From positions 6,944,001 to 7,008,000 of the forward strand of contig OZ281498.1 of assembly GCA_965637545.1 (NCBI GenBank): a DNA stretch of 64,000 nucleotides, read 5' to 3'. Positions within the stretch are counted from its first letter, which is position 1. Each line of letters starts with the position of its first letter. The position numbers and the translations under genes are program-made. Positions 1-40,124 of the stretch are shown here, in pieces. Under the pieces are notes generated by a model, which searched no databases, was not told the origin of the DNA, and saw only the letters and a list, made by a program, of their open reading frames with translations. The stretch is from Phallusia mammillata (Eukaryota).

Positions 1-320
1 TATTGTGACGCACGAGGTGACTGTTTATTTGCATTGTTTGAACACAATAGGCGTATATAAAGTGTGATGCACAGTGTGTCTTCACTACCTACCTATGCAT
101 CTTGTGTGTGCTCTTCCCGGAAGTCGACGGTTTGTGTATGTGTTTGTTTTTTGATTTTTTTCTCACAGACTTTTTTCTTGCATACGAAACATGGTCGTGG
201 ATTAAATCCCCATTTGTTTTCCCCTATCACAACAGAAAAACGGTTCAAACAATCAAATTTGCCCACAATGTTGAGCTTTGCATGGTACATATGTAGTTTA
301 CAACAACCCTAAAATTAAAA

Positions 321-725
321 TTGGCGGTGCAAATAAAAAACGTGATAAATCGTTTGGCAAAAGCAATTGCTTTGTACTTTAAAAAACTTGTTATTTTGGG
401 GTTTGATGATACATCCGCTAAACACTTTTTAAAAATAAACTCATTTTGGAAAAATTATACTCAATCTGACCGTTTGAACAAGCTTTTTGCGTTTGAAAGG
501 GAGTATATAAAAACATTACATGGAAACAAGGATACTAGTTGCAATCAGGATGAATATAAAAAAGCGTGTATTGATGCTCTGGCAAAGCAGCTCACTAGAT
601 ACCCCAATCACTCATCTTTACCTATAAGTGCAATAACTGCAATAACTGCTAAGCAAACAGTAAAAACGATTCGATATAAATGGTTCAATAACCTGGCATT
701 TAGAAAATGCGTCCAACAGTCATAG
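321..725 (+). pseudogene. N-terminal segment of the transposon polyprotein, no recognised domain
   Basis: 134-aa ORF overlapping the PHD ORF at 707-725 next to an A-run (gtcaaaaaacatg), consistent with a frameshifted continuation. Confidence 0.45.
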
Positions 726-1258
726 GTCAAAAAACATGTTGTGTTTGCAAAACTGTTTGGTGCGGAGAACAAATGGTAGAATGTGAATCGTGTTTACAAT
801 GGTTTCATCCACGATGCGTGTTTCAAAATGTCACCCCCCAAAAATTTAGCAACGAGCAATGGAATAAGCTTCATTTTGTATGTAATAATTCAATTGTAAA
901 CGACGCCGATCCAAAAAACGTGTACCGCCATGCTTCCATTGATATAGGCACAATCAGTACGAGCAAGCCAGCATCCCCTAACTCAATTAATCCCGTTGTT
1001 TCAACTAGTATTTCAAAAACTCAACCGCTATCATCCGACTTTTCTGACGAAAGCCTCTCACCTGCCACGGACGCCATGTCAACTCACGCGAACGATTGCG
1101 CATTTTCTGATAATTTAAGCGATTGTAGTGTCGATTCACAAATTGAGAGCACAATTCAAAACAGTTCGTCAGAGGAGAAATGGATTTCGACAAATGTTTT
1201 AAACGACCTTGGTAAAGTTAAAAAACAAACAACTTCTCTGATGCAATGTTTACGTTAA
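707..1258 (+). pseudogene. PHD-finger plus Ser-rich linker segment of the transposon polyprotein
   Basis: CCVC-x(11)-CESC-LQWF-H-PR-C...HFVCNNS matches the C4-H-C3 PHD pattern, but the eighth ligand is Ser instead of Cys. An S/D-rich low-complexity linker follows. Confidence 0.75.
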
Positions 1259-3468
1259 CCTGCAAGAAAAAATTCACAATGATCTTGACGTTTGGGACAG
1301 TATTACAAAAAAACGCACTGCGAATAAGTTTGGGAGCAATGCGTACAAAGACACTATTTTTTAAAAAAATACGACAAATATATGATAATTGCGTCCCTAA
1401 CATTGAAAGCCATTATTTACGGGATCCCCAAAATGTCAATACTATTAAGCCAAATTCCGACAGCTACCTCGAAGGAGCAATCAAACTGTATTGTGCCCAC
1501 GGGAGATGCTGCAACTGTGAAATAAAAATATGTGTGGATTTGATTTCGTTCGTGGATCGAGTTGAAGGCCAAGTAACGGTAAGAGGCATGCGAAACCACC
1601 AAAAAGGTTGCAAACGGAGACGACGGGCATCTGGTAAAAGACGGGGCCAACTTAAACGCCAACTTCAATTTCAGTCTGCGAATAAATTACAAAGAAAATT
1701 ATTTGACAATTTAACAGAAGCGGAACGTTGGTTAGGTGCACATACTTTTTTACCCTCTCAATCCGTGCTTCGCAACATAAAAAGCGAAGGTAAATCCATG
1801 TTCCATTATTTTAAACTATGGTTTATAAATTTGTTGCACTTTCTCCAGTTAAAAAAGCAACGAACTTTTGTTCGCCTAATATGCATTCATCCCCCGTCTG
1901 TAACATTATATTCAAATCCACAAGTAAAACTCTATTTCGATCTTTGTTTAAAAGATATCGTCTACTTTGATGCTACTGGAAGTTGCCTCCGTAGTCAAAA
2001 TGGATACTCTGATTTTCAGGTGTATACACTTTTAGTAAGAAACCCTACTAAAGGGGAAGTGGCACTTCCGATGGCAACAAACGTTACCACTTGTCATGAC
2101 AGCAACAGCATCAGCCTTTTTTTTCGAGTTTTTTTTTATGAACGTTGTAAAAATTTGTAAAGTTTCTAGAAAACCGGCTTTTATAATAATTGATGAATCC
2201 ATGGCCATGTGGAATGGGGTTCTTAAAGCCTTATGTAGAGAATCGCGCCTTGAATATTACAATCGTTGTCACCCCATAGTAGTTGGGTTGCCACTCAAAG
2301 ATGATTTAAAACTAACAATAGTGCATAATTGTTACAGTCATGTCATGAAAGCAGCCAAAATTCTTTGCCTGAAACAATGGTCCGACAAGAAATTAGCTCA
2401 GTCGGCTCTATACTGGATAAATTTGCTTTTTACTTGCAAAACTATTAAGGAATTAGATGATGCTGTTGCTAGTTTAATTATTTTAACCCACTGCGAAAAA
2501 AACTCTCCCCTTGTAGAAAAACATTTTAACAATTTGAAACATAAACTCGATAACTCCCCAAATGAAAACGTTAACGATAACACCTTTGAATTGGACCCGG
2601 GTGATGATGCAGATTATTTTTTTACTGGAAAAAGTGATGATGCTTTACAAGAAAAAAATCCCGATTTTTTCATCGTTACGACAGAATGTTTAAAAATATC
2701 ATGGTTTCAGACGAGTACAACATACAACTGTCAGCAAATCTTGAAAACAATTTGTACCACAATCCAACTTTTTTCAAAATATTACTTGAACGGGTACTGA
2801 GCAGAATTTGTTGCACATCACATCTATTGCTAGGGGATTTATCTCGACATGTTGCCGACGACACGTCGCCTGAGCAGCATGAGCTGTACTTAGATTATTC
2901 AAATAAATGTGACAAATTAAGTAATGTGAAATTTCAGACCATTTTGACAAACAATAACACACAAGGAATTATAGAACAACATTTCGGGGACATGAAACAA
3001 AATTATATCGACGGTAAAAGAGTAGCACGAATAGACGACTTTGTCCATCTATATCACAAAGCGATAAAGGTTCAGGAAAAACAATTTGCTGACAGTTTGA
3101 TGCATTTAAATAAAAATACGCAAAACACTGGAACAGACGAAAAATCCACGCCTCTGGTTTTGGCGCAATTTAAAAAACGAAAACGAAACTCAAAAAGCTT
3201 CTATTCGTCACCACGATTGGCAAAACGAATTCGGTTTCAAAATAATAGTACTAAAGACAACAATGTATTAACCCGTACCCCAACTTTGGCGCATTTTTCC
3301 TTTGTTCCATCAACTCCCTCTGTCGTAAAAATGGTGAAAACATTGGCAAATTATATTTGGCATCATGTGACATTTACTGACGCATCAATTTTAAATCAGG
3401 CTTTAATAACGCCCAACGGCAGTCCACTAACATGGGAACGGTGCCCTATGCATTTTCTCTATTGGTAA
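1246..3468 (+). pseudogene. MULE/NOF-type DDE transposase split over three ORFs by two frameshifts
   Basis: First Asp in VYFDATG (1969-1971), second Asp in IIIDES (2192-2194), CxxH in HNCYSH (2330-2341) and Glu in TNNNTQGIIEQHF (2974-2976). This order and the CxxH motif are typical of Mutator-like transposases. Frame switches lie in T-runs at about 2116-2137 and A/T-runs at about 2650-2690. Confidence 0.8.
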
Positions 3469-3474
3469 CAAATT

Positions 3475-4821
3475 TTGATTCCAAATTCGTTAAATTTAAC
3501 GAAGAACAAAGCATTTAAAAACTTGCAAGGAGTTATGCAGCCCATCTGTCGGCCAACAGACGGTCAAATCAGGAATAACTTACTTATTCCTATCCTATGG
3601 AAAAATCATTTTATGTTAATTTGGTTTTGCAAAGATAAAATGGAACTTAAATTATTTGAATCAGCTAAAGAACCCCAAAACGAACTTGTTAAGTTAATAC
3701 AGTCCCATCTAGTGCCGTTTTTAAATGACATTACTGGCCCAGGCTCAAAGATTAAATTCTTCCATGACACTTTAATACCACAAACAGACCAGTTAAGTTG
3801 CGGAGTTTGCGTTTGTTATGGAGTAGACCGAATTATTTCAAACGTATCAAAACAACCCCTATGTAATCCTAAGTTTTTCGGTCAGTGGATTGCATACGCC
3901 TTAGTAGAAAATTCGCCACAGTGCAATTTTGCAATAAAACGACATTTAGACGAACAAAATGACCAATCCGTCGGTTTGCAAAACTTTGGAAACACATGCT
4001 GGTTAAATTCTGTTTTTCAATCACTTAAATTCCTCATGAAGCAAAAGTTTGCCAATTCACCTCGTACGGCTGTTTCTGACCCCGTTGCTAACTTTTTAAC
4101 TTCCTTAAGTAACAAATCGTACGACGTAGACGTCCATCGCAATTTGATTAAAAAAATCTGTAAAGATCTTAAATGGAACTTTAGTAATCAACATGATGCC
4201 GGCGAGTTTTTAATGTTATATCAAAATGGTAGTCTGCTAGAAAACTGTGGCCTTAATCCTATGCATCAATTTCGGTCAACCACCACCTGCCAAACCTGCA
4301 AAAGCGTCCAGAATCAAATGGAACCGGAGCAAAACTTTTGGTTTGTTCCGATGTACCAAAACATAGTTGCTGGCAGTAAATTAAGCAAGTATTTCGATAA
4401 ATGTTGCAATGAAATCTTTTTGGCAAACTGCTCCACTTGCGGCAGTGAAAAACAGTTTGAAAAAAAATTAAAACTTGTTTCAACTTCCGACGTTTTGCCG
4501 ACCGTATTGCCACGATCTAGTATTAGCGGAAAATGCACCAAAACGATTTTATCGGATTTGCGATTGACACTAGGAGACGCTGTGTTTGTTTTAAAATGTG
4601 CAATTGTTCATGTTGGCGCGCAATCCAGTTCCGGGCATTACATGGCCTACTCATTTGCGGAGCAAGGAATATTAGAATACAATGACAAAAAAATCAAACA
4701 TGTTAATTGGGACAATGTTGAACATCGAATACAGAGTGGCGCATACATTTTGTTTTACACTAAATTATCTCAAATTCCCCAGAATATGCTAAGTACAAGC
4801 CAAATCCCTATCACAATCTAA
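3475..4821 (+). CDS. Tandem Ulp1/C48-like protease plus USP/C19 ubiquitin-specific protease domains (transposon-borne)
   Basis: Ulp1-like: IPILWKNHFML (His 3607-3609), LFES (Glu 3658-3660 at the usual Asp position), PQTDQLSCG (Gln 3781, Cys 3799-3801). USP: Cys box VGLQNFGNTCWLNSVFQ (Cys 3997-3999), QHDAGEFL, two CxxC pairs (CQTC, CSTC), His box HVGAQSSSGHYMAY (His 4636-4638), YND (Asp 4684-4686) and terminal AYILFY. Confidence 0.9.
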   Translation: MIPNSLNLTKNKAFKNLQGVMQPICRPTDGQIRNNLLIPILWKNHFMLIWFCKDKMELKLFESAKEPQNELVKLIQSHLVPFLNDITGPGSKIKFFHDTLIPQTDQLSCGVCVCYGVDRIISNVSKQPLCNPKFFGQWIAYALVENSPQCNFAIKRHLDEQNDQSVGLQNFGNTCWLNSVFQSLKFLMKQKFANSPRTAVSDPVANFLTSLSNKSYDVDVHRNLIKKICKDLKWNFSNQHDAGEFLMLYQNGSLLENCGLNPMHQFRSTTTCQTCKSVQNQMEPEQNFWFVPMYQNIVAGSKLSKYFDKCCNEIFLANCSTCGSEKQFEKKLKLVSTSDVLPTVLPRSSISGKCTKTILSDLRLTLGDAVFVLKCAIVHVGAQSSSGHYMAYSFAEQGILEYNDKKIKHVNWDNVEHRIQSGAYILFYTKLSQIPQNMLSTSQIPITI

Positions 4822-5469
4822 AGAAAAAAAAAAAGAAAACTTAACTTACAACACGCTAACGCTCAAATTTCTGAAAAAAATTTTTTTGAAAATTATCCGT
4901 TGTACCACGCTACTTCAGATAATGTAATTGATAAAATAACTGAACTGGATTTAAACAACAAGGACAGAGAAATTTATCATACTGTAACAGAACACTTGCT
5001 ACGTGATATGAGTATGAACTGGACCAACGCCCAATGTGTAACTGCTGGGTATAGATACTGCCTTTATTTGACCTTATCAAAATGCGACCTAAAAAAGTAT
5101 TATCAAAATTTTTCATTTGAGAAAAGCAATATTTCGACAATTGAAACCTTTAATTTGTGGCAATACGTAAAGCATTTCCTGTGCCGAGAAAAAATTAGGA
5201 ACCGCCAATTTTCAGACGGCCAAATTGTTAGTTCTTCAAGAGTGGGATTAGAATTAAAACCAAATTTAATTTCGAAACAAAGCTTGTTGAATTCCGTTGT
5301 TAACAAAACAAATTACAATTTGCTCGAATTTTTGGATATAGTTGTAAACCGTGAGGCTATAATTTACTACCAGGCTACCTGCGATGAAACGTCGTACGAC
5401 GTTGCTACTGCTAATTTCTCCTTATCCTGTAATACTTTTGAAAAAAACCAACAGTCAACTACGAAATAA
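4822..5469 (+). pseudogene. In-frame C-terminal extension of the transposon polyprotein, unrecognised domain
   Basis: The frame is open from 4822 (RKKKRKLNLQ...) through the 4900-5469 ORF, in the same frame as the protease ORF and separated from it by one TAA. Confidence 0.5.
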
Positions 5470-5510
5470 AAAACTGCAGATCTCCATACAAAACCTAACA
5501 AACTCTAGGC

Positions 5511-6014
5511 CAGGGGTCTCAAACTCAAAGTGCTTTGAGGGCCAAAAACAACAAACTATTAAGTAAGTCGAGGCCCGCACTATCGAAACATTTGTTACAG
5601 TGTAGCATGACAACAAACATATTGCGTGATTAAAAAGGGGAAATGTTCATTAATCCCATTATCTTTATTGAACAAACAATATTGTGATAAATAACAAACA
5701 AATATACAGTGTAGCAAAGTGAAAGAGCCAACTCTGCCCTGTTGCTTTGTGTGGAAACAATGGCATACAGTGACACCACAATAACAGTGACGCAACAATC
5801 GCAATTGCTGATTCTAAAGAAGGACTATTTCGATTATGCCATTTAAACGTTGCAAATACTGCTATCAGAGAATGAATATATCATGTAAACTCACTAGTTT
5901 TACTAGGTATTCCGCCCGAGTAAAACACATAACTTCTAAAAGTTCCTTCGCGGGCCGCACAAAAAACCTTGGAGGGCCGCATGCGGCCCGCGGGCCGCGT
6001 GTTTGAGACCCCTG
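5511..6014. mobile_element. hAT (Buster/Charlie-type) MITE
   Basis: Perfect 14-bp TIR caggggtctcaaac / gtttgagacccctg. Perfect 8-bp TSD ctctaggc (5503-5510, 6015-6022). GC-rich gggccgc subterminal motifs. Confidence 0.95.
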
Positions 6015-6453
6015 CTCTAGGCCCAGGTAAAATACGGCTATTGGCAAAGGTCCTGGGTTAACAAAAAAACCGAACGACCACCGCAAGGACTGCCTCCTGG
6101 GCGTGGTTGGAAAGTCCTAGTTAAAGTTGCAAACTTTAAGGTAGAATTCGTAATACAAATAAGTTTTACTTTAGTATTCCTGATTAGCCACTTAAAAGTT
6201 AAAGATAAAATAAATTCAGCTAAAAAGCATGGCCATAAGGTTTTAAACTTAAATAAATTTGTCCCGAACAAAAAAAACGCTTTTTTCCAAATAAACATTT
6301 TGTTAAATTTTCAGTTATCGGACTGCCGCCTGATTGTCGATAAAAAAAAAAAAACATTTCGAAACATGTATATGGTAAACGGATAAACCACATACATTTC
6401 CACAAAAAAACTCGAATTCTCATTTCGGCGAAATGACGGTGGTTAAAAAACAA

Positions 6454-6659: not shown

Positions 6660-9600
6660 ATGTAAGCATGATATGCCTGCTTTGTTAGTCAATAGTTTTT
6701 TAAATTTTTCATTGTTTTAAACTTTTAGTTATTTTGTTTGCGCATTTCAAAGCAAGGTTGTACTTGTACCTAACATTGCATTTAACTACATAATATAAGA
6801 AATTTGATTGACTGCACAACTCAACATTTCATGTGCATACCATCCAGCAGGGAATCGTCATAAGTATTGTGTTACTTTAGGCCTACTTGTTAATATATTT
6901 GTTTACAAACAAAGGTCTGAAACACAGAGGAGAGATTGTTTTCAACAAGTAATTGAAGATGTCGGTATCAAACAATGGTTTGAGTATGTGAGAAAACTAG
7001 GACTTTCAGAACCCGATATTCAAAATGCATGGGAGCTACAGGAAGTAATCAGTGAAAAGAAACACAAAATGCTTATTACTTGGAGCAACTACATTGGTAA
7101 TAATGTGTGATATTGTACTTGCTCTCCCTCTCTGTAGAGGTTTACCAGTATATTTTTAGGAAATTTCAATGACAACCAGAAAAAAATACTGAATGAGGTT
7201 AAAAGGGAATTGTATGGTCCCAGAGTCACAGGCCTGGACAATCACCTGCCAGTAAAACTTTTAGCTAGTAAGACTTTCTTAGTCGGCTGTACATAATTTA
7301 AAAGTTTTCAATGTTTTCAATTTGTAGCAAATGTTTTTAGGCACCCCAAACATTGTTAAAAAGGATCTAGTGAAAATAATACTCACCCACTGATGTGACT
7401 GTGTCAAAGCAAATACTATATCAAATCAAACATGCTTCTATTTTTTACAATGACTGTCGCTAAATGTTACGGGACATAAATATGTGCTAAAATGTGTTTT
7501 ACTCCAAACCACTGTTTCCCAATCTTTGGTACTTATATATACCACCAGTATCAATAAAAGCTGTGATTTAAAGTCTTTGTAAAAATGCATTTTTGGGGTT
7601 TGTTCATAAGTTTTTGTACCAGGGGACAACATTTCAACACAACACTAGCAAAGTTTTGCCATTGATCCTCATGATTTTGGCCAATGCAAACATAGGGGTT
7701 AAACTTTAACTTGGCTAAGAATGATTTCAAGTCTGTGTATAGCAGTGGTTCCCAACCTTTTTGTAGTCACAGACCCCTTTTATAAATTTTAGATGCCAGA
7801 TGACCCCCAAGGTAACTTTTCTTAAGTCTTTATGTTTTTCGTTTCTTTCATAATATGTTACTGTACTTTTTGGGTAGCATTTTTGCTCAACCTTCACACT
7901 CCTTAATTTTTTACTGTAGCAACAAAGAGATATATATATTCTAGTGTACGAAGGTTGAAACAAAGCATTATAAATTCCATTGTTCATGTGTGTTGTGATG
8001 TCACAATGGGACTAACAATCACAAAAAAGTAATTTTTCCTGACCCGAAGGTTTAATTAACAGTCTGCACTTGTATGCAGGTAAGTAAAAACGGGTCAAAC
8101 ACTTACACATTTTTTACTGTTGGTAAATGGTACTAAAATGTTTGCCTCCAAGGACCCCCTAAAACCATCTCACAGCCCCTTGGGGGTCCGCGAACCTTAG
8201 GTTGGGAACCACTGGTGAATAGTGTTTTTAATGATTTTATGTGCTTTAGAAAAGTCCAGTTGCAAATAACCGAACTGACAAAATTAAGTTAATAATCAGT
8301 CCAATGCAACTTTTCATCAGTTATCTGTGTATGTTTTTGTGTTTAATTCGACACTATTGTATACTCCAGATCGGGACAAAGCATGGCTTATATACCTGTT
8401 TGTCAAGTTTTACTGTGCTGATGCTGTCTTTTTGGGAATTGTTAGAGGAAAAATGGAATTAACTGAAGATAATATTCAACAAATCAAAAATGATTATTAC
8501 CAAAACACTAGTGAACAAAAGTTTCAGATGGTGTTGACTTGGTGCAAACAAACAAATAAAAGTAAGTAAACATAGACGCTAATCCAGACAACAGCACTGC
8601 TTACATAATTTTCTTTGAAAGTACATTTTTGTTGCTATCTTTCGGGGGATTTTATGATTTCAAAAATATATACTGTTTTACTGTTCTTATTGTAATTATC
8701 AGCCTGCTTTAATTTTGGTTAAGCTTGCCCTATTTAAGGTGTTAACCTTTGCTCCTATTTAAAAACTATTGTGTCTTGTATTATTTATTTGTGCTGGTGG
8801 CGATGTGTAGTTGTAAAATAATTATTTTTTTACTTTAGAACTGACTGCTGAACACTTTTGTGCAGGGCTGACCAATTATGACACATGCATTGCAATATGC
8901 TCCAGCCTACACAATAAATTATTTCTGCATAGGTGTTTGTCCAACCCACCTTCAGGGTCATATATATATATGTATATATTCCAGATACTGTGCATGAAAT
9001 TGCCCATGGCTTTAGGCACTTAAATGCCTATGTTCCTGATGAATTCGATTTTATTTTTCAACCTGTGCAAACAGAGAATGGTTCCAGACAAGAAGGTAAA
9101 AAACTTTTTGATACTTTTTCTAACAAACATGAACATATGTTGATCACTTGAATAATCCTTGAAGCATTTAGACCAGCGATGATGACATGGTCAAAATCAT
9201 AGTATGCCAGGCCTGTTGAACATGTTATACATAACCTAAAGCTAAGTTCTTTTTCTTTTCAGATCATGTGGATGGATCAATATCTGAAGGTCCTGTGACT
9301 TGCAATGTTTCTGCAGGTGCACAATTCATTATTTTCATGTCTAAACAACTATGTCAAAGAATTATATGATAGTTTGGTATATTAGTTTGAAAAAAACACA
9401 ACTTGTATAATTTATTAATACATTAAACCAACAATGCAGCATTTCCATTCTTTTATTGTTAAACGTTGTTATAGATTTTTCTTGAAAAAACAAATTTTTA
9501 CAACACTTGTATTTAAGTCAATAGGTTTAACTTCAGAGCAAAATTGGCATTTTAAAGTACAAAAAACATAGTTAAAAGGTAAACTAATCTTTACATATAC

Positions 9601-10635
9601 CTACATACCTTACATAGAGTTTTATGAAGTCTTCAGACCTAGTATGTTTTATTTGCAGTGAACCCCTCACAACCATCACTGCAGGTATATCTACTTTTTG
9701 GTGAACTCTTTTCAGTTTTTTAATCATGACTAATTGATTTTTAGAATCCTCCTGTAGAGTGCTGCCTAATGTTCAGCTATGCACACCAACTTTCTACAAT
9801 CCCTAGACAGGTAAAAGTTTTAAAAAAACCTTTCTTGGCCACATGATTTAAATGACTTTGTCATGATTTGGCTTACAAAGTAGCCAAAAGTACTAAAACC
9901 TTTCCAGCAAAACATTAGTATTTGACTCAATCAATCAAATACTTTTTTTTGTTTTATTAAACTCAAGTATTCAATGTTGTCCTTTTTTTGCAGATTGCAT
10001 TGCGCATCACCAAGAGCCCTGATCTTAATTTTAGAATTTGGATTGATGAAGAAAATATCCATGGCCGATTGTATTCCTCTATGGCAGACGCTGTGAAGCA
10101 ATGCCACATTTTTTTAATGTTTATTTCCAAGGCATATCAAGAGAGCGACAACTGTAGAAAGGAGGCAGTTGCTGCTTCAAAACAGAAAAAACATATTATT
10201 CCTATCAAAGTAGAAGAAGGTTTTAAGCCTGACGAATGGTTAGGTAATTATAATAGCTTGTATGAAATTGACAAACAGGATTCAAAACCTACCATGTACT
10301 GTATAATTTTGTTGATTAAACAGCAAACAGATACAGTCGACTTGTTATTATAACTGGCATGATAAAATACCTACAATAAAGAAATTCATGCAGCAATCCT
10401 GCCTTAAGGGCAACTTGTTTTGAATAACAAACTAAAACAATAAGGTAGAATTTGTTTGACAAAACATTTGTTAAACTAAAATGAATCACAATAAAGTAAA
10501 TGTTTACAGCAGACTTTATTTGACTGTTTCTTAGACTTGATCATGGAAGACCTAAAGTACTTTGATTTTACTAAACATCCGTTTGAGGAAGAGTTTAATG
10601 CATTGCTGAAAGAAGTTCAACTCTACATTCGATGA
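6660..10635 (+). CDS. Gene 1: death domain-death domain-TIR protein (about 363 aa, MyD88-like architecture with a TIR_2-type domain)
   Basis: Phase-consistent exons 6660-6661 (AT of a split ATG, tentative), 6915-7096, 7160-7267, 8370-8561, 8985-9095, 9263-9316, 9659-9684, 9745-9810, 9994-10243, 10535-10635 (TGA), all GT-AG. DD1 is FQQVIEDVGIKQWFEYVRKLGLSEPDI...KMLITW and DD2 is ...MELTEDNIQQIKNDYYQNTSEQKFQMVLTW. The TIR reads LMFSYAH...IWIDEENIHG.LYSSMADAV...FISKAYQESDNCRKEA...IIPIKVEEGFKPDEWLDLI...YFDFT. Confidence 0.85.
7743..8214. mobile_element. hAT (Buster-type) MITE in gene 1 intron
   Basis: Perfect 16-bp TIR cagtggttcccaacct / aggttgggaaccactg. TSD gtgtatag / gtgaatag (7/8). Confidence 0.9.
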
Positions 10636-10892
10636 ATAATAATTAACATCAGCTATGTCGAGATTAAAGTTTACTCATAGTCTTAAACCTTATTGACTTG
10701 GTTGTTGGCAGCAAGACAATGTTAAATGATGATGTATGTAAAGCACTGTGATGGTTTAATTTTCTATGTTCAATGTACTGGTAAAAGCATACCTTCTGTG
10801 TTATTTTGCTGATATAAGCATATCTTTTTTGTATATTACAGTTTTATTGGTTATTTTTATGGGTCTATACCAAAACTTTTAATTATAATATA

Positions 10893-11730
10893 CATGGGTC
10901 CCTTTCCCTGAAGGGGACACATATTGATTTTACTCTAATCGTTTTTTCTTTTTGTTTCCTGAAAGTTTGTCCCACTCGTTTTGCTGTCAAATGTTTGATG
11001 GATTTGGATGAAACTTACACAGATGGTAGATTTTGTTATGTGGATGTGAATCCCACTTTGTTTGTGTTGATCACCCCAGCATTTACGCTGCTAGCCCCCT
11101 AAATTGTTTTTTTCCCCAAAGCTTGCCCGACTCGTATTGCCATAAAATGTTTCATGGATTTGGCTGAAACTTCCACAGATATAGTTATGTAGATGTGCAT
11201 TCCACCTTGCTTGTGTTGATAACCCCAGTATTTACCCCGCTAACCCCCTAAAATGTTATTTTTCTTTCCAAAGTTTGTCAACTAAAATAAGTGATCGTTT
11301 AAAAAACGTCAGAATTAAATGAAATTTGCAAAGTTTATTGAACATACTATTTTAAGTCCTCAATTGTTGTGTTTTAGTACCACAATTCCAGCTGGCCCCT
11401 AAAATGAGTGACACTTTTAACAATGTTTAAATTTAATGAAAATTGGACAGCTTGTAAATTTGCTAGTTGTAGGTGTCTATTTTTTGTTTTACCCCATTAT
11501 ACCACTATTTACTCCTTTTCTTTAAAAAGAACGTTAAATAGAGCATACAATATCTGGGGTGAATCTAACTTGTATAGTCTGTGATCTACATAGTATTATT
11601 ATTAAAGCCCAGTGCCGATCACTGTGTTTTACCTTACAACACCCGACTTTCACATGGTTATCTCTTGAAATGCATTATTTTGCACCTTGCATGTGTGGGG
11701 ACCCATGAGTTTCTGCTTGCGGAAACAACT
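10893..11730 (+). mobile_element. Helentron-associated (HINE/DINE-1-like) non-autonomous element
   Basis: Subterminal inverted repeats catgggtccc (10893-10902) and gggacccatg (11698-11707), a 5' stem gtcccttt..aaggggac, and a 3' hairpin gtttctgc-tt-gcggaaac (11709-11726). Internally there are two clear tandem units of about 155 bp containing atggatttgg.tgaaactt, plus degenerate copies. Confidence 0.6.
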
Positions 11731-11953
11731 AAGGTTATAAAAGACGTTTGCTAATATTGGACTCAACATAAAATAAGCGAAGGAAATATATTAATGTTTT
11801 AAAATGAGTTGTAGTGTATGCGCAACGACAAAATGTGCCATGTCACCCTTCTACTTTCTTCCTGTTTCTTATTCCTTGTGTTGTTTGCATATGTACTTTG
11901 GCGGGAAATATTCAATGTATTTAGATGAAACAGTTGTGCTATTTGTTTTTTAC

Positions 11954-12138
11954 CAGTGGTGGGATTCAGCCGGTTCGCACAGGTTCTTTAGAAGGGTCTC
12001 ACGAAAGTTTATGAGATTAGCGAACTGGTTAGCATTAGCCTACTGGTTACTGTCAATGAACTTTTTGTAACAGAACCGGCTAAAAAATGTGACTTTTGTG
12101 AAAGAACCGACTGACAAAAAATTTGAACCCCACCACTG
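11954..12138. mobile_element. Short hAT (Ac-type) MITE
   Basis: TIR cagtggtgggattca / tgaaccccaccactg (14/15). Flanks ttttttac / tttatcac (6/8). Internal ccggttc/gaaccg motifs. Confidence 0.7.
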
Positions 12139-13615
12139 TTTATCACCCAAGTGGTGTGCATGTAAGCCCATTTTGTAGAGTACCCCTGGCGTTATGACGT
12201 TCATATCGATGAATACAAATTCCAAAATATGCATATTAATAACTGGAAAATATTTGTTTTCAAACGTTTGTGCGCTGAAAAGCTTTAAATGCGTAGAATA
12301 TTGTGCCAAAATTTGGTATCGTATCTTTTTTAGTTTTGGAGCAATAGCGATTGTTGGCCAGTTTCACTCAGGTAAAAGACAAAGGGTTTGGAACCGTGCG
12401 TTGAGTTTATTTCGCTTGAAATAGCTGCGCAACGTTAAAACGTTATGGAGCCCAAGAAAGTGTGGCACACTTGTTAATAACAGCTGAACGCGCTGCAGCT
12501 ACACCTACGCCGTATTATAAAGTGTTTGTAATGATATAGTGAAATGTACATGAAAGGTGGCGAAAGCTTCTAAATCTAATCCTGCTTTTTCTACCTTGTC
12601 TTGATAGGCTATCATTGGTCAGAGGTTTCCAACTCATTTTTTTCCGGGAACCTAGTCAAACTAAAAAAACAATACGTCGCGAAGTTCACACTGCACAGCT
12701 GACATTCATTTTGAGTTTGATAAGGCTGTGTACGGTATGTAGGCTAAGAGCAGAATTAAAACATACAAAATCGAACTTTACCCGGTTTAAAAAACGCAAT
12801 TCGGTTTGAAACGGACATTAACCCGAACCCTAAAATAGTTTGTTTAAAACAATCTGAACCGAACCAGAACCCCCTAAAAACAGTAGGTAGTAAACCCGAA
12901 CCTAAACCATATAATACTGCAAGCGTTTCTATTGAAAAAGTAGCCAGCCTACTAGCTAGGCTATTATGGACGGATAGTCTATCAGTTTTTCTCTTTAAGA
13001 AAGGTTGGTGTTAAATGAGCTTAATCCTAGCAATTGCTCCGCTCATATAAAAAATGCTTACCATTTGTTCATATTTTCTTGTTTAGACCACATTTGATTT
13101 TGAGTCGTCTGCAATGTGCCTTACAGTAACATCATTACCACTAGTGGCGGAAGAAATGCGCGGGAAAAATGTTTGGGGCAACTAGCAACAACGAGGGCAG
13201 GAACTTGGCCGAATGGTCTGGCGCGCCTGACCCACATACAGACATAAAAAAAACCTTAATCGGGATTCGTCCCCGGGAGTGTCCTGGATTCGAACCCCGT
13301 GAAAAAAAAACATTTAAAAAAATAAAAACTAGCAACAACGAAACGATTTGTTTGCACATACTTTTTGTTTTTGTTTGTTTGCATTTCGATTACAATAGTA
13401 ATAACATAAAATAATTTTAGTGATTTTATTCAGCTTCACTACAATTAAAGTTGCAATCATATTCTCAATTTGTTAATGGTATTTGTTACGGTAGTTCCTC
13501 TTTCCTAAAAAAGCAAACAGCTCGAGCTGTATTGTGTTGAATTGCTGATTTGTCTCCGAGCCGGCTGTACATCTAAAATAAACAGGACCGCATGTATTAC
13601 TTTGAATATTGGTTT

Positions 13616-13844
13616 GCTTGGTGCAAATTAATATCACTCTAGGTCTAATATTGCTTGGTGCACCTTCATATCGCTCGATGTACCTTTAAATCGCTTGGTG
13701 TACCTGTCTACGGCTAGGTGCATTTTTACCTGTCGATATAATAGGTGCGCCAAGTGGCATAAAGGTGCACCAAGCGAAAAAAATGTACTAATCCATGTTA
13801 AGGTGCACCAAGTGATATAAGGGATAAGGGTGCATCAATATTAG
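13616..13844. repeat. Foldback-like inverted repeat built from tandem 20-bp subunits
   Basis: Left arm: gcttggtgcaccttcatatc, gctcgatgtacctttaaatc, gcttggtgtacc (13653-13704). The right arm carries reverse-complement units ggtgcgccaag, aaggtgcaccaagc and aaggtgcaccaagtgatat. Outer pair ctaatattg (13645) / caatattag (13836-13844). Confidence 0.7.
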
Positions 13845-14079
13845 TGTTCTCAAATAAACCTTTTGTGTTCTGTAGAGTAAAAGTAAAAGCACTGGTAGTA
13901 ACAAAAGTGTTTTCTTTTGTTCAGAAGTTTTTTTACAAACATGTTACAGTTATATGTTTAATGTGAGTTTAACAGATCTCCGTAAAGTTTCCAGACACTC
14001 TTATGTCAGTTGTCATTGAACTATCTTTGACCATTCAGGCATTTACCAATCCCACTAAACTACTGTTTTTTCATGGAAA

Positions 14080-17000
14080 ATGACTGAAAACGAAGACCCC
14101 AACCGCCAGTAAGTTTTCTGTTTACTTTTTTCTCAAGTATATTTGTGTTATACCTCATTCCATTACATCAGTTTTTTTGTGGCAAAGTTTTTGTGTTGAC
14201 TACCAAAAGGGCAAATAGTTTTTATAAAGTTAAGTGTAACTGTGCATGTTGGCTAATATATAAAGCACTTCTAAAACTGTGGTTATTTTGATAAAGCTGT
14301 TTATGATCTCTAATACAGTGGTTTCCTAACTTTTTTGTGGTACCAGTTTTAAGGTTACACACCCTGTTTTCAAGCAGAAACTGTTATATACATACTGAAT
14401 CTAAAAGTGTAGTACAATGAAGAGCTTAGCATACTAATGCACCATTTGTAAGTTCTTGCTTTCCAATGTACTTTTTGCACTTTCTGTACACCTAAATTCC
14501 CTAGACACTAGTTTATTGGTGAGTGCATAATCGAAGAAAAAACGTTTTGTGTACAAAAAGTTACTAGCGTCCTACTTTTGCACCAGATTGTAAGTGATAC
14601 AACAATGTGTTTCAGTAACAGAATAACTAAGTGCTGATAGCTGTTCACAGACCACCGGGAATGCTGTCTTGCTAGTGGTACACATATATACTATTGGTAG
14701 GGAACCACTGCTCTAATGTCAATGATAAAAGTTGACCTATGAGTTTGTGCTAAGGTTATTAAAGTGATTAATGCTCTATACCAGGGGAGTGCAACATACG
14801 GCCCGCGGGCCACAGTCCGGCCTGCCAAGCTTTTTAGTGTGGCCCCCACCAACACACTGATATAGATAAAAAATGCAATTCTTCTAAGAATTTGGCAAAA
14901 TTTTCCACTAGTTTTTAGTAAATCTCCTAAGTTGCTATACTATATGTAACAATATAAGCTAAATTAGCGTTTTCCAACTAGTGGATCATACAGCAGTTAC
15001 AACAAGTAGCCTACTTCACTGCATGTGACGTAACAATTCCCTTTGTCTTGTAAACAATTACTTTGTTGCGAAAGCCAGCGTTGCGCCAAAACTTTATATG
15101 TTGTAGAAAATAAATTGGTTGATGCTTTTGGAAGAATTTCGAATTTATTGTGCACATGAAAAAAAGTTATGTGGCCATCGCTTGAGGTCAGAAATTGGTT
15201 ATACAGCCCACCTATGAAAAATGTTGCACACCCCTGCTCTATACTGTGATCAGTTTTTTTTAAGGTTTGGTTTGGGTGACCGCTAAGTAGTTTTAAGAGA
15301 CCGCAAGTGTTTCATTTAAATACCAAAAAATAGCCATATTTGCTTATTTGGGAAACCGCTGGAAAAATTTGGGGGACCGTTTCGTTCCCCCAAAACACCT
15401 TAAAAAAAACACTGACTGTGATTTTTTCAGACTTACTAATGCAGAAAAAAATGAGGTATTTGCGAATTTAATTTCCACTATTGGTGGCATGTGGCATGAA
15501 TATTTGAGAAAACTTGGAATGCCAGAATCTGATATGCCAACACAACCAGACAGTAAAACTGACAAACATGCTGTGTTATGTCAATGGGTTATGAAAATTG
15601 GTACGTTGTTACACAAGTTTATGTGGTTGTGGTATAAATTTGAAAAGCAACCACGTATTGACAATGTCTTTTAAGTTTAACTGATTTGCAAATATGTTTG
15701 GACAGGGACACTCACTGCTGAAAAAGTTGTTCTAATGCGCAAAGTAAGACATGAGGTTTTAAATCCAGAGGAACCAAGAAAATGTGAGGTTGATAGAAGC
15801 CTTCCAGAAAAACTTGCACAAAGTAGGTGTCATATGGCTCTTTATTTATTTGTTGATTTGTTTATGTCAGGTGTCTGCAATTTTTTAGGCGGCACATGCC
15901 AATTTACTTTTATTTCCATGTGTTAAGCCCTCGCGTGCCAACGCTTTTTCAAATAGTAGTGGTTCGTGTCAGCAGATATTAATATTAAAGAGAAAGCAAA
16001 GTGTTTTGTGCATGTAAGGGTGAATTTTAAGACAATGGCATAATAAAAACTATAAACAAGCAGTGTGACATTAAAACTATAAGCAAGCAATTGTTACTTC
16101 AATATAAACACGCCAATCGGTTGGGATGCCATGAAAAACCACCTCGCGTGCCAACGCATGTCAGGTGTTGCCGACACCTGGTTTATGTATTTAATAAAGA
16201 AGATTCAGCTACTTTTTATGTAACACTCTAAACAACTATTGAACACTGATTATTTAAAAGTGTCTGAATAAAAATCATTATGGATTGTGACATGCTTTTG
16301 GTACATAGTGTTTTTGTCCTAATATTATTTACCTGTCTTAGTCATTTTTGTAACAATATTCAAGTTAGAATAAGTTTTATAGGTTGAACCATTGTAAGTT
16401 TTATGCAACTTTTAACTGAATTTAGTCATAACTAAAGGTGTCTGTCATATCTGATTTATATCTACTTTGATTGAAACATATGGACTGCGAAACTAGCCTT
16501 GATTTGCAGCAATTTGAAACATAAAAGATGATGTAGCACTTCAAAAGAATTCGATAGCATTATTGCAAGTTTAAAATTTTTTCCCAACCCCCTTTTACTT
16601 TTCCTGGATCCAATATTGTGCTCCCTCTTACAGCCCGTCAGTTACATTTCTGGTCTTCTAAAACAGATCATTTCAAAATGAAAACTGAATAAACATGAAA
16701 TGGTCTGAGTCTGTCCTTATGATGTGATTAGGGGCATATACTGTAACTTAAATTTATAAACTTCCCCAATGACATCTATTCCCATTTACTCTGGGAAATT
16801 ATGCTATAAAATTCATGTCTGCTAGTCAGTAGTTGTTTCATTGCCTATTTTATTCAATAATTTAAAATGACATGTACAGCAGTAAATGCCTTCTTCCAAG
16901 TGTAAAAACAGACCTGAAATTTAAAAACCTGTTATGCCAAAAAGTTTTGCGCTGTCTACAGCTTAGAATTGCTGAGGTGTCAAGTGGTGGCATCAGGTCC

Positions 17001-18673
17001 TATTATTATCTATTATCCTAAATTCCTAATGACAACACCAAAAATAATTTTAACGAAACCTCAGTGCTAAAAACACTAAAGGGCGAAAACACCTTTCTGA
17101 AGCAGTGATGCACTTGTTAAATTGCCACAGTCACAAATACTGTGGAGTTAGTTACTGGAAGACAGACATTATGCCAAGCATTGGAGGTTTAGCAGCAGAC
17201 CTTTAGAAGACACTTTAATTGAATATTTGTAACTAACCATCGGCTCGGTGGACAACCTGAACTGATGATGACAACAGAGATTGTTGAATTGACTGCATCA
17301 TGTATTCTATATACACCAGTTATATGGTACCTTTGTTTATGATTAAATTCATTTTAAAGTGAGTGTATATTGTTCCTAAACAGTTCCAGGTTTGGCAGAA
17401 ATAGTTTTTATTTCAATTAGTCTTTTGTCTGCCATAGTTTTCTGGTATCCTTTCAGTGTTTTAACTGCTTTTTTCTGTTATAGGTCGTGATCGAGCATTT
17501 TTGCTTTATTCTGTTATGGACAACTTCTATGGTAAGAGTTGGAAGGAGATCGCTCGGCGAGAATTGAAGATTCGTGACAGTGTTTTGTTTGATATTTGTG
17601 AAGATCACAAAACCAGTCAAGAAAATCGATACATGGTGCTTGCTTACTGGGTCCAGAAAAAGGGTTTTAGTGAGTGTTATATGTAACCTTGTTATGTGTT
17701 TGGCTACTCCTGGGGTCGGCAACCTTTAAGGCGACGCTTGCCAATTTACTTGTTATTTTCATGTATTAATGACCTTGCATGCCAACGTTTTTCTAAATAA
17801 TAGTGTGGCTTGTGTCAGCAGGTATCAATAAAAAAGAGAAAACATTATGTTTTGTGCATGTAAGTCTGAATTTTAAGACAATGGCATGATAAAAACTATA
17901 AAAAGCAGTGTAACAGGTTAAGATGTTACTTTAACATAAACACGCAAATCGGTTGGCGTACCATGAAAAACAACCTCCCGTTCCAACCTTGGCATGCATG
18001 CCAGGGGTTGCCGACCCCTGGGCTACACTTTGTATTATAAAATAAATATGCCATGGCTTTAATTGTCCCATCTACGTAGCTTAGTAGATAAAGCACAGTA
18101 ATTCAAGTACATCCATATTTGGCTATATTGTAGTTTACAAGAATACATGTTTTTTCCTTTATTTACCGCATGTCATAGATAATTATCTTTGTTTAAAAAC
18201 TGGTGTTCTAGCTCATTTTAGCTTTCTACAAGCAAGCAAATTAAGTTGCTATGGTATGATCACTACATAGTTGCTTCTAGTAAATACCTAGTGTGAAAAC
18301 TTAATACTTTGTTGTGTACCTTGGTATTAGTTAATTTCCTGGAAATGGCATGGTATTTTTAAATATTTACTTTTTAAGCAAAATTACCAAATAATGACAC
18401 ACCTGCATACACTCATTACACACATCTGCGCAACACTCACAAACAAAAACGTATTTTTATTGCAATATATATAATCTCCTTCATCATTGTAAGCATTGCA
18501 AATTGTACATAATGAATATAGTACATAAATTTGCTGCAAAAACGAAGTCATGTTTTCTAATCATTGACCTACTTTGTTTGCAGGGAGCAATGTTGAAATA
18601 GAGCGTGCATTAATAGACTTGAAATTGTTGCACCCTAATGCATATGTTAACCGTGAAGGGGCCGAACAGGAAT
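14080..18673 (+). CDS. Gene 2: tandem death-domain protein, paralog of gene 1 without a detectable TIR (3' end uncertain)
   Basis: Phase-consistent exons 14080-14108 (MTENEDPNRQ), 15431-15600 (LTNAEKNEVF...WHEYLRKLGMPE...QWVMKIG), 15706-15822, 17484-17669 (RDRAFLLY...WKEIARRELKI...YMVLAYW), 18584-18673. Intron phases and positions match gene 1. A possible last exon is 18912-19132. Confidence 0.8.
14316..14710. mobile_element. hAT (Buster-type) MITE
   Basis: TIR cagtggtttccta / tagggaaccactg (12/13). TSD ctctaata / ctctaatg (7/8). Confidence 0.85.
14782..15236. mobile_element. hAT (Buster-type) MITE
   Basis: TIR caggggagtgcaacat / atgttgcacacccctg (15/16). Perfect TSD ctctatac. Confidence 0.93.
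15868..16180. mobile_element. hAT (Buster-type) MITE, family X copy 1
   Basis: TIR caggtgtctgcaa / ttgccgacacctg. Perfect TSD gtttatgt. The internal sequence is shared with 17710-18020 and 39848-40124. Confidence 0.92.
17710..18020. mobile_element. hAT (Buster-type) MITE, family X copy 2
   Basis: TIR ctggggtcggcaacc / ggttgccgacccctg. TSD ggctactc / ggctacac (7/8). Shares the internal gccaatttacttgttattttc...tgaattttaagacaatggcat. Confidence 0.9.
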
Positions 18674-39847: not shown

Positions 39848-40124
39848 CAGGGGTCGGCAATCCATGACACGCGTACCAAGATTGGCACGCGAGGGTGTTT
39901 TTCATGGCACGCCAACCGATTTGCGTGTTTATATTGAGTAACAATTCAACCAGTAACACTGCTTTTTTCAGTTTTCATTATGGCATTGTTTTAAATTCAA
40001 CCTTACATGTATAAAACACTCTGCTTTCTCGATAACTTATTATTGCAATCTGCTGGAGAGGTTAGTTAATACATAAAAATAACAAGTAAATTGGCACGCG
40101 TCGCCTAAAAGGTTCCGAGCCCTG
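39848..40124. mobile_element. hAT (Buster-type) MITE, family X copy 3 (opposite orientation)
   Basis: Ends caggggtcggcaa / ggttccgagccctg. Perfect TSD ttctaaag. The interior is the reverse complement of 15868-16180 and 17710-18020. Confidence 0.9.

What the first reader, a model, noticed from the sequence alone, without database searches (positions are those of the whole stretch)
321..5469. Mutator/NOF-like transposon carrying a chromatin reader plus both a SUMO-type and a ubiquitin-specific protease in one polyprotein
Seen: the domain order is PHD finger, DDE transposase (D1969, D2192, CxxH, E2974), C48/Ulp1-like protease (H3607, E3658, C3799), then C19/USP protease (C3997, H4636, D4684, two CxxC pairs). 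The segments share a frame or are joined by simple frameshifts, with no introns. Established: Ulp1-like domains are known cargo of plant MULEs and Zisupton, and Ginger elements can carry OTU, Ulp1 or PHD domains. SUMO and ubiquitin marks are central to transposon silencing. I do not know of a described element with tandem Ulp1 plus USP fused to a Mutator transposase. Inference: this could be a self-contained anti-silencing kit in which the PHD reads histones and the two proteases strip SUMO and ubiquitin (for example H2A-Ub) at the element or insertion site. All six protease catalytic positions look intact, while the transposase part carries frameshifts.
Basis: partly seen in the sequence, partly recalled or inferred. 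Interest (0 to 1): 0.85.

Follow-up and report, generated by a model that had tools for sequence, protein, structure and literature searches.

The report
Dead Foldback-type Mutator transposon, two proteases
This stretch is a broken copy of a multi-copy sea-squirt jumping gene whose single giant gene joins a histone-mark reader, a Mutator-type cutting enzyme, a SUMO-type protease and a ubiquitin protease; the combination is conserved in intact relatives, but nobody has tested what the two proteases do.

Summary
Window 728-5427 (+) is colinear with intact single-ORF proteins of 1,900-2,300 aa found elsewhere. The domain order is PHD finger, DDE transposase, C48 (Ulp1/SENP-like) protease, C19 (USP) protease, then a short conserved tail.

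The transposase core folds like IS256/MULE transposases (ISCth4, Z 10.3). By shape it also matches a protein cluster named after the Drosophila NOF-FB protein, whose members often carry PHD and C48 domains. In one relative genome the ORF lies between inverted arrays of a 176-bp satellite, which is Foldback architecture.

The family is multi-copy in the window's own species and in others, so it is a transposon and not a chance neighbour of a pseudogene.

This copy is dead:
- four frameshifts
- two in-frame TAA stops
- about 50 residues missing from the C48 domain
- Glu in place of the family's catalytic Asp
- no ends found

PHD+Ulp1 on animal Mutator elements, and a C19 protease on another transposase, are already published. 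I found no paper describing tandem C48+USP on a MULE. The anti-silencing role is untested.

Earlier notes of this scan describe the same family elsewhere in this genome.

Verdict: new variant of a known kind.

The parts
345..725 (+). Possible N-terminal piece of the ancestral ORF (frame 3); tentative
   Evidence: Open frame 321-725. The only similarity is weak and colinear, to Styela clava P0167 residues 94-155, which lie upstream of that protein's PHD (tblastn E 0.008).
728..1243 (+). Frame-2 piece holding the PHD finger (737-883: CCVC 737-751, WFHPRC 800-817, HFVC 872-883)
   Evidence: Pfam PHD 27.9 bits against cut-off 24. Aligned to the PHD of P0007 at E 4e-10. blastx is colinear. Motif coordinates.
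1244..1357 (+). Short frame-3 piece between two frameshifts (near 1243 and 1357)
   Evidence: The frame-3 translation matches the relatives' EW..MTKNRS..F..AY block. Other genomic copies differ by +2 nt at 1243 and -1 nt at 1357 (table 4).
1358..2118 (+). Frame-1 piece: pre-core region with conserved Cys/His, and the first half of the RNase H-like core including the first catalytic Asp (codon 1969, motif DATGS)
   Evidence: 40% identity to P0007 744-1041, E 4e-69. Motif invariant in relatives. Codon checked.
2119..2651 (+). Frame-2 piece: second catalytic Asp (codon 2192), CxxH motif (NCYSH, 2327-2341), start of the helical insertion domain
   Evidence: 43% identity to P0007 1030-1176, E 1e-40. 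Motifs. Other copies differ by -1 nt at 2118 and +1 nt at 2651 (table 4).
2652..3465 (+). Frame-1 piece: rest of the insertion domain, catalytic Glu (codon 2974, motif TQGIIEQHF), basic linker, and a remnant of the start of the C48 domain
   Evidence: 33% identity to P0007 1250-1486, E 7e-30. Glu checked. Alignment.
3466..3468 (+). In-frame TAA stop, next to a deletion of about 50 residues in the C48 N-terminal lobe
   Evidence: Stop map. Read-through with X at the stop, aligned to five relatives, shows the GWLS..DAY..FG.LDC block is absent.
3475..3969 (+). C48 (Ulp1/SENP-like) catalytic lobe: His 3607, Glu 3658 (Asp in most relatives), Gln and Cys in QTDQLSCG (3781-3804; Cys 3799)
   Evidence: Pfam C48 subthreshold in the window (E 0.07). 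Family profile hits SENP8 at E 6e-4 with the catalytic residues aligned. Pfam C48 in 7 of 27 relatives. Conservation.
3970..4818 (+). C19 (USP) domain: Cys box (Cys 3997), QQD-like box, two CxxC pairs (4288-4299, 4429-4440), His box (His 4636), Asp 4684
   Evidence: Pfam UCH 62.4 bits against 23.9. Best solved relative USP36, E 9e-11. These residues are invariant in 10 diverged sequences. Coordinates.
4819..4821 (+). In-frame TAA stop inside the ancestral ORF
   Evidence: blastx to P0180 runs through it in one frame, 2659-5427 against residues 844-1857 of 1860. Codon.
4900..5469 (+). Conserved C-terminal tail of the ancestral ORF (no known domain)
   Evidence: Colinear with the ends of P0180 and P0156. 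Weak pairwise similarity to the P0156 C-terminus (E 0.003) and to the ORF overlapping the end of P0007 in L001 (E 0.011).

Best explanation
Window about 728-5427 (+) is a dead, truncated copy of a multi-copy DNA transposon of the Mutator superfamily, of the Foldback/NOF/Rehavkus-like kind.

In intact relatives one intronless ORF of about 1,900-2,300 codons encodes, in order:
- a variable N-terminus
- a PHD finger of the H3K4me3-reader type
- a DDE transposase with an IS256/MULE-like RNase H core, a CxxH motif and a helical insertion domain
- a Ulp1/SENP-like C48 cysteine protease
- a USP (C19) deubiquitinase with a zinc ribbon
- a short conserved tail

Shown here: the architecture, its conservation across diverged lineages, conservation of all catalytic residues, the multi-copy state, Foldback-like inverted satellite arrays in one relative genome, and the decay of this copy.

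Inferred: the DDE core performs cut-and-paste transposition. The PHD tethers the protein to H3K4-methylated, active chromatin. The two proteases remove SUMO-like and ubiquitin conjugates from chromatin or repair proteins near the element. They might do this to blunt SUMO/ubiquitin-dependent silencing or to steer repair of the excision and insertion breaks.

The confidence given is for the identity and architecture. For any specific role of the proteases I would give no more than about 0.3-0.35.
For: - Colinear matches of all window pieces to P0007, P0156, P0180, P0201 and P0216.
- PHD and UCH above the Pfam cut-offs.
- C48 by family profile against SENP8, with His/Asp/Gln/Cys aligned, and Pfam C48 in relatives.
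- Core model pLDDT 72.5. Best solved match is the ISCth4 IS256-family transposase: Foldseek E 2.9e-5, Z 10.3 over 227 residues against 8.5 for Hermes.
- Shape search finds a cluster named '120.7 kDa protein in NOF-FB transposable element' (C48 in 45% and PHD in 34% of members), then MULE clusters. The language-model search gives only MULE/SWIM clusters. Weak Pfam MULE hits sit at the right profile positions.
- The DATGS, IDGS, NCxSH and TQGIIEQxF motifs are conserved.
- Both proteases are present in every full-length relative, with invariant catalytic residues.
- Clusters at 90% identity hold 14-45 members of many lengths on different contigs.
- About 770-1,040 short contigs per DNA run of the window's species lie on 1-6000 at 88-100% likeness. 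Part of these belong to the other repeats at its two ends.
- Four loci of one assembly are 97-99.5% identical over more than 26 kb, with inverted 176-bp satellite arrays on both sides of the ORF.
- The PHD's nearest solved relatives are the H3K4me3 readers Spp1, BPTF, DIDO1, CFP1 and PHF2.
Against: - No TIRs or target-site duplication were found for the window copy or for any relative, so mobility is inferred and not shown.
- Pfam MULE never reaches its cut-off (best 16.3 bits against 27.6).
- The link to Drosophila NOF rests on the automatic name of an Atlas cluster (TM 0.60), not on a direct alignment.
- The satellite arrays were seen in relatives only. The window has none within reach, and its left side is cut by the window edge.
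- No activity of either protease and no histone binding has been tested.
- The only hint of transcription is a few low-depth contigs in a run that is only guessed to be RNA.
Confidence: 0.85

Rival explanations
1. The proteases serve transposition itself, not anti-silencing. They would deconjugate ubiquitin or SUMO from repair and replication factors at the double-strand breaks made by excision and insertion, biasing repair in the element's favour.
For: Bao, Kapitonov and Jurka proposed this for Ulp1 and OTU domains on Ginger and Mutator transposases and for a C19 domain on a Trichomonas transposase (PMC2836005). Fusion in one polypeptide with the DDE core puts the proteases at the break site. 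The catalytic residues are conserved.
Against: There is no direct evidence. It does not explain the H3K4me3-type PHD. It is not exclusive of the chromatin reading.
Confidence: 0.25
2. The PHD is a target-site selector that steers insertion to H3K4-methylated promoters, as Mutator elements prefer gene 5' ends. The proteases would be self-processing enzymes that cut the giant polyprotein into working parts, as clan CE proteases do in adenoviruses and Mavericks.
For: The nearest solved relatives of the PHD are H3K4me3 readers. The protein is unusually long for a transposase, with long poorly conserved linkers. The comparison with clan CE proteases in virus-like elements is from my own knowledge.
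Against: I saw no ubiquitin-like domain or conserved Gly-Gly cleavage site in the alignments, though I did not search for them systematically. Two different deconjugating folds are not needed for self-cleavage.
Confidence: 0.1
3. The family is a lineage-specific host gene family (a domesticated transposase fused to chromatin enzymes), and the window holds a pseudogene of it.
For: No ends or target-site duplications were found. A Styela clava member is annotated as an ordinary gene with isoforms.
Against: There are dozens of copies at over 90% identity, of all lengths, on different contigs. Hundreds of diverged fragments occur in the window's species. Copies over 26 kb long and 97-99.5% identical carry inverted satellite arrays. 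The ORFs are intronless.
Confidence: 0.04
4. The protease part is an unrelated processed pseudogene that happens to lie next to a transposase fragment.
For: None found.
Against: The same order occurs in one uninterrupted ORF in P0007, P0156, P0180, P0201, P0203, P0205 and P0216, from several lineages and assemblies.
Confidence: 0.01

Closest known systems
Foldback elements carrying NOF (FB-NOF of Drosophila melanogaster) and database proteins named '120.7 kDa protein in NOF-FB transposable element'
   Same: The shape search puts the DDE core next to a cluster with that name, whose members often carry PHD and C48 domains. Relatives of the window element lie between long inverted arrays of tandem repeats, as FB elements do. 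Most Foldback elements are placed in the Mutator superfamily (PMC4079207; PMC3169594).
   Different: A USP domain is not among the common families of that cluster. I made no direct alignment to Drosophila NOF. The repeat unit here is 176 bp, in arrays of at least 8 kb. The window copy has no arrays within reach.
Rehavkus (Repbase group beside or within MULE)
   Same: [quoted passage not shown] Relatives here have a PHD plus 176-, 186- and 238-bp arrays.
   Different: Rehavkus is reported only from arthropods and annelids, with 9-bp duplications and 26-400 bp TIRs and no protease domains listed. I could not test sequence relatedness because no Repbase copy was available.
Animal MuDR-type elements with Ulp1, with or without PHD (Hydra, lancelet; Repbase Reports cited in PMC2836005), and plant MULEs with ULP1 domains (KI-MULEs; melon, rice, Arabidopsis)
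   Same: A Mutator transposase together with a C48/Ulp1 domain. A PHD sits beside the Ulp1 in some Mutator transposases.
   Different: No USP/C19 domain is described in them. In plants the ULP is often a separate captured gene.
Ginger1 transposons with OTU, Ulp1 or PHD
   Same: A transposase fused C-terminally to a deconjugating cysteine protease, sometimes with a PHD.
   Different: The Ginger core is a Gypsy-type integrase. Here the best fold match is IS256/MULE. Ginger elements carry one protease, not two.
Trichomonas vaginalis XP_001314237.1 (transposase_11 + Peptidase C19), cited in PMC2836005
   Same: A C19 ubiquitin hydrolase fused to a DNA transposase.
   Different: It belongs to a different transposase superfamily (IS4/IS5-like) and has no C48 and no PHD.
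Zisupton
   Same: From my own knowledge: a large animal DNA transposon whose transposase carries a zinc finger and a C-terminal Ulp1 SUMO-protease domain.
   Different: Zisupton belongs to the KDZ group. Every fold and language-model hit here goes to MULE/IS256, and none goes to KDZ families. I made no direct comparison.

Membership tests
Mutator superfamily (MULE / IS256-like DDE transposases) | RNase H-like core with D, D, E and a C/DxxH motif after the second Asp | tested here: met
   DATGS, IDGS/IDES, NCxSH and TQGIIEQxF are conserved in 13 relatives and in the window. The model shows b1-b2-b3-a1-b4-a2, then helices, with Glu in a helix.
Mutator superfamily (MULE / IS256-like DDE transposases) | Fold closest to a solved IS256/MULE-family transposase rather than hAT, P, RAG or integrase | tested here: met
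   ISCth4 is top in Foldseek (E 2.9e-5) and in VIA-align (Z 10.3, 227 residues, against Hermes 8.5 and integrases about 7.5). The margin over Hermes is modest.
Mutator superfamily (MULE / IS256-like DDE transposases) | Pfam MULE (PF10551) or Transposase_mut at the gathering score | tested here: not met
   No hit in the window pieces. Best relative reaches 16.3 bits against cut-off 27.6, though at the right profile positions, 25-94 of 99. So this is a distant member.
Mutator superfamily (MULE / IS256-like DDE transposases) | Target-site duplication of 8-11 bp (usually 9) and terminal inverted repeats | tested here: inconclusive
   No TIR pair around the window ORF or around L001-L003. In L003-L006 the copies extend beyond the 10-kb flanks, so the ends were never reached.
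Foldback / NOF-like elements | Long inverted terminal regions built of tandem subrepeats around a coding middle | tested here: met
   Met in relatives only. L004 has a 176-bp array at 1-1532 and the inverted array at 18197-26581, with the ORF at 10001-16582. L005 and L006 have the same layout; L003, cut about 1 kb past the ORF, shows only the upstream array. Not seen in the window.
Foldback / NOF-like elements | Protein homologous to the Drosophila NOF protein | tested here: inconclusive
   The only evidence is a shape match (TM 0.60) to an Atlas cluster automatically named after NOF. No NOF sequence was available for alignment.
Rehavkus | PHD finger in the single transposase ORF plus a subterminal minisatellite | tested here: met
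   PHD in the window and relatives. Arrays in L002 and L004. The definition is from PMC6446971.
Rehavkus | Sequence relatedness to Repbase Rehavkus transposases; 9-bp duplication | not testable with these tools
   No Repbase or Dfam library was available, and the element ends were not found.
Peptidase C48 (Ulp1/SENP, clan CE) | His-Asp-Cys triad with the oxyanion Gln, in the order H...D...Q...C | tested here: met
   Met for the family. The profile aligns His, Asp, Gln and Cys onto the matching motifs of SENP8, and the residues are conserved in A7. The window copy has His 3607, Glu 3658 instead of Asp, Gln and Cys 3799, and it lacks about 50 residues of the N-terminal lobe.
Peptidase C48 (Ulp1/SENP, clan CE) | Pfam PF02902 at the gathering score | tested here: not met
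   Not met for the window piece (13.3 bits against 20.7). Seven of 27 relatives match at E up to 1, best 4.8e-6.
Peptidase C19 (USP) | Pfam UCH at the gathering score, with Cys box, His box and catalytic Asp | tested here: met
   62.4 bits against 23.9 over the full profile. Cys 3997, His 4636 and Asp 4684, plus four zinc-ribbon Cys, are invariant in A7.
PHD finger, H3K4me3-reader subclass | Cys4-His-Cys3-type zinc ligands; aromatic cage residues (Tyr before the first Cys, Trp before the His) | tested here: inconclusive
   Pfam PHD 27.9 bits against 24. The nearest solved relatives are Spp1, BPTF, DIDO1, CFP1 and PHF2. Relatives have LYCVC and WFH. The window keeps WFH but has Cys in place of the Tyr. 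Binding was not tested.
Ginger (Gypsy-integrase-like transposases) | Integrase-type DDE core with H2C2 finger and GPY/F motif | tested here: not met
   Integrase cores score below ISCth4 and Hermes. There is no integrase Pfam hit.

The most novel reading that the evidence does not exclude
The family is an animal transposon that carries its own chromatin counter-defence. A PHD reads H3K4 methylation, and two active erasers, a deSUMOylase (or deNEDDylase) and a deubiquitinase, are delivered in cis with the transposase. Together they would locally undo the SUMO- and ubiquitin-dependent steps of heterochromatin formation or of break signalling. This would be the first transposon-encoded anti-silencing enzyme pair in animals.
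Probability: 0.25. Interest if true: 0.8.

Novelty: new variant of a known kind. Interest (0 to 1): 0.5.

Why it matters
SUMO and ubiquitin conjugation drive transposon silencing and DNA-break signalling in animals. Transposon-encoded enzymes that reverse them are known only as scattered single domains (Ulp1, OTU) of untested function.

This family keeps two different deconjugating proteases with intact active sites, next to an H3K4me3-type reader, across lineages only 22-28% identical to the window copy in the protease region. That argues for selection on both activities. It also gives natural intact sequences on which to test whether transposons fight silencing, or steer repair, enzymatically.

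The family also links protein-coding Foldback elements to large satellite arrays in chordate relatives.

The window copy itself is a dead fragment of no functional consequence.

Tried and rejected
- Word-indexed homologue search with the 448-aa ORF alone found nothing, because of the length filter.
- The first structure model of the 681-aa middle region, from 3 sequences, was unusable (pLDDT 36). The trimmed 16-row alignment worked.
- A profile of the middle region against PDB sequences gave no hit.
- TIR searches around the window ORF and around L001-L003 found only chance pairs. The 243-282 / 6800-6828 pair is not colinear and lies in the neighbouring gene.
- I considered the joint 177->5968 in read contigs as an empty site and rejected it. 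It has only a 22-nt side, and both sides lie in other high-copy repeats.
- Exact look-up of a window-encoded protein, meant to fetch the upstream flank, found no record.
- Zisupton/KDZ and Ginger were considered and set aside, because all fold and feature hits go to MULE/IS256.
- Two Atlas look-ups of P0156 failed because the service was busy.
The stop was read through only with X.

Full report
**What is in the window.** On the + strand, open pieces in alternating frames run from 321 to 5469.
- Pfam places a PHD finger at 737-883 (27.9 bits, cut-off 24) and a full-length UCH/USP domain at about 3970-4758 (62.4 bits, cut-off 23.9).
- The stretch before the USP gives only a subthreshold Peptidase_C48 match (E 0.07).
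- The 1246-3468 region gives no Pfam match.

**Relatives.** An exhaustive HMMER search with the 448-aa ORF found 404 proteins. Most are ordinary USPs, but several cover both the pre-USP part and the USP part. One of these is P0007, a 2,074-aa protein from a Tara metagenome scaffold.
- Every window piece aligns colinearly to P0007: PHD E 4e-10, then 4e-69, 1e-40 and 7e-30 for the middle, then the protease region.
- Further searches gave P0155 and P0156, eleven more relatives including a Styela clava protein, and full-length cluster members of 1,860-2,316 aa.
- blastx of the window against these shows one ancestral ORF from about 728 to 5427. It reads straight through the stops at 3466 and 4819.
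- The ORFs of relatives are uninterrupted over 5.2-6.9 kb, so the gene has no introns.

**The transposase.** Relatives and the window share four motifs: DATGS, (M/I)IDGS (IDES in the window), NCxSH and TQGIIEQxF.
- A language-model search of the middle region returned only MULE/SWIM clusters (top score 0.94).
- Pfam MULE matched 3 of 14 relatives weakly, at the expected profile positions.
- A model built on a 16-row alignment (pLDDT 72.5, pTM 0.75) matched the IS256-family ISCth4 transposase best. Foldseek gave E 2.9e-5. VIA-align gave Z 10.3 over 227 residues, ahead of Hermes at 8.5 and retroviral integrases at about 7.5.
- By shape in the ESM Atlas, the second-nearest cluster is named '120.7 kDa protein in NOF-FB transposable element'. 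Its members carry Peptidase_C48 (45%) and PHD (34%). MULE, FAR1 and IS256 clusters follow. The Styela protein gives the same picture.
- I therefore place the core in the Mutator superfamily as a distant, NOF-like member. Pfam's own MULE threshold is not met.

**The C48 domain.** I aligned 27 sequences covering the pre-USP region.
- The alignment shows the Ulp1 signature in order: WLS..V.DAY, then HF.L.W, DS, Q.D.SCG.
- Its profile hits SENP8 (2bkq, E 6e-4), with these His, Asp, Gln and Cys motifs aligned to the corresponding motifs of SENP8.
- Pfam Peptidase_C48 matches 7 of 27 members (best E 4.8e-6).
- In ten sequences only 22-28% identical to the window, the C48 His, Gln and Cys are nearly invariant.
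- In the same alignment the USP Cys box, QQD box, four zinc-ribbon Cys, His box and Asp are invariant.
- Every full-length relative tested has both proteases.
- One protease-only relative (P0063) has lost the C48 catalytic residues.

**The PHD.** Its nearest solved relatives are Spp1, BPTF, DIDO1, CFP1, PHF2, PHF8 and ING proteins. From general knowledge, these all read H3K4me3. Relatives carry LYCVC and WFH, which are the positions of the aromatic cage in BPTF (my recollection, not tested). The window copy keeps the Trp but has Cys where the Tyr should be.

**State of this copy.** The ancestral frame runs f2 728-1243, f3 1244-1357, f1 1358-2118, f2 2119-2651, f1 2652-5469.
- TAA stops lie at 3466 and 4819.
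- Contigs from other copies in the same species differ at exactly 1243 (+2), 1357 (-1), 2118 (-1) and 2651 (+1) (table 4). At least the contig-assembled copies therefore lack these four frameshifts.
- Read through with X at the stop, the window lacks about 50 residues of the C48 N-terminal lobe, the GWLS..DAY..FG.LDC block.
- The catalytic acid is Glu where 7 of 9 relatives have Asp.
- So the protease half is not spared. The copy is dead throughout.
- 321-725 is only weakly supported as part of the ORF.

**Transposon nature and structure.**
- Clusters at 90% identity hold 14-45 members, from 49 to 2,316 aa, on different contigs.
- In three DNA runs of the window's species, 770-1,040 short contigs lie on 1-6000 at 88-100% likeness.
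- The summed word depth over 200-5400 is several-fold that of the one exact junction contig, 150-373. This is a rough indication only.
- Four loci of one assembly (L003-L006) are 97-99.5% identical over their whole 14-26.6 kb and differ by internal deletions.
- In L004 the ORF (10001-16582) lies between a 176-bp satellite array at 1-1532 and the same array inverted at 18197-26581. Both arrays are cut by the locus edge. A 238-bp array lies at 7384-9023.
- A different lineage (L002) has a 186-bp x 28.5 array upstream of the ORF.
- This is Foldback architecture.
- The true ends and target-site duplications were not reached. No TIRs were found around the window copy or around L001-L003.
- The window has no such arrays downstream. 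Upstream, it is cut by the window edge.

**Comparison with what is known.**
- Most Foldback elements are assigned to the Mutator superfamily (PMC4079207; PMC3169594).
[quoted passage not shown] They are reported from arthropods and annelids (PMC6446971).
- Ulp1 domains, sometimes with a PHD, occur on Mutator transposases of Hydra, lancelet and plants. A C19 domain occurs on a Trichomonas transposase_11 protein. The authors of PMC2836005 proposed that ubiquitin/SUMO pathways take part in transposition.
- Four literature searches found no paper describing tandem C48+USP on a Mutator-type transposase. Repbase could not be searched.
- Earlier notes of this scan describe the same family elsewhere in this genome and reached similar conclusions. 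I treated them as leads. I confirmed a Foldback layout only in relatives from another assembly, and the domain order in this window and its relatives. I did not find the esterase domain that one of them mentions.

**Mechanism.** Shown: the architecture, the conservation of catalytic residues across deep divergence, and multiplicity. Inferred: the DDE core performs cut-and-paste, and the PHD tethers the protein to H3K4-methylated chromatin. The two proteases would remove SUMO-like and ubiquitin marks locally. Less likely, they process the polyprotein. The H3K4me3-type PHD fits targeting of active chromatin better than reading of repressive marks. None of this has been tested.

**Verdict.** The window copy is a decayed fragment. 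The family is a new variant of a known kind, namely NOF/Rehavkus-like Foldback MULEs with an added USP. The anti-silencing interpretation remains a hypothesis.

Noticed in passing
window 5505-6020: A MITE-like insert with 20-nt terminal inverted repeats (CTAGGCCAGGGGTCTCAAAC and its complement, 90% match). Its word depth in DNA runs is 10-30 times that of the MULE, and many contigs begin at 5511. It is unrelated to the finding and lies just after the ORF.
   Followed up: partly
window 1-200: A short high-copy repeat around 23-72. The depth of bin 1-200 is 5-10 times that of the next bins, and contigs break at 22-23 and 55-74. It sits at the window edge, so the left flank of the element cannot be read.
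   Followed up: no
L004 7384-9023 and 17167-17524: Inside the giant relative element there is a 238-bp tandem array (6.9 copies) about 1 kb upstream of the ORF, and a 358-bp palindrome about 600 bp downstream of it, between the ORF and the right satellite array. These could be transposase-binding or regulatory parts.
   Followed up: no
L004 4211-4450, L005 4212-4451, L006 5965-6204: A conserved 79-codon ORF lies in the unique left arm of the giant relative element. It has no Pfam family on record.
   Followed up: no
L001 10703-11305: A 200-codon ORF overlaps the end of the 2,074-aa ORF by 17 nt. It is weakly similar to the window's C-terminal tail (E 0.011). The tail may be made by a frameshift or be a separate product in that lineage.
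   Followed up: partly
P0001 (NCBI KAM4815304.1, Thomomys bottae, 3,205 aa, 'LOW QUALITY PROTEIN'): This was the top hit of the USP part (E 1e-46), with 10 matched stretches. It is a mammalian gene model with about ten USP-like repeats, which could be tandem copies or an assembly artefact.
   Followed up: no
window 46596-56192 and 29091-31946: Two sets of diverged direct repeats with periods of about 650-1,100 bp (families D1-D7, 60-88% identity). They look like tandemly repeated exons or domains of neighbouring genes.
   Followed up: no
window 16099-18020 vs 39848-40114: Three inverted repeat pairs of 49-88 nt (86-94% complementary) lie about 22 kb apart. They are probably two copies of another small repeat in opposite orientation.
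   Followed up: no
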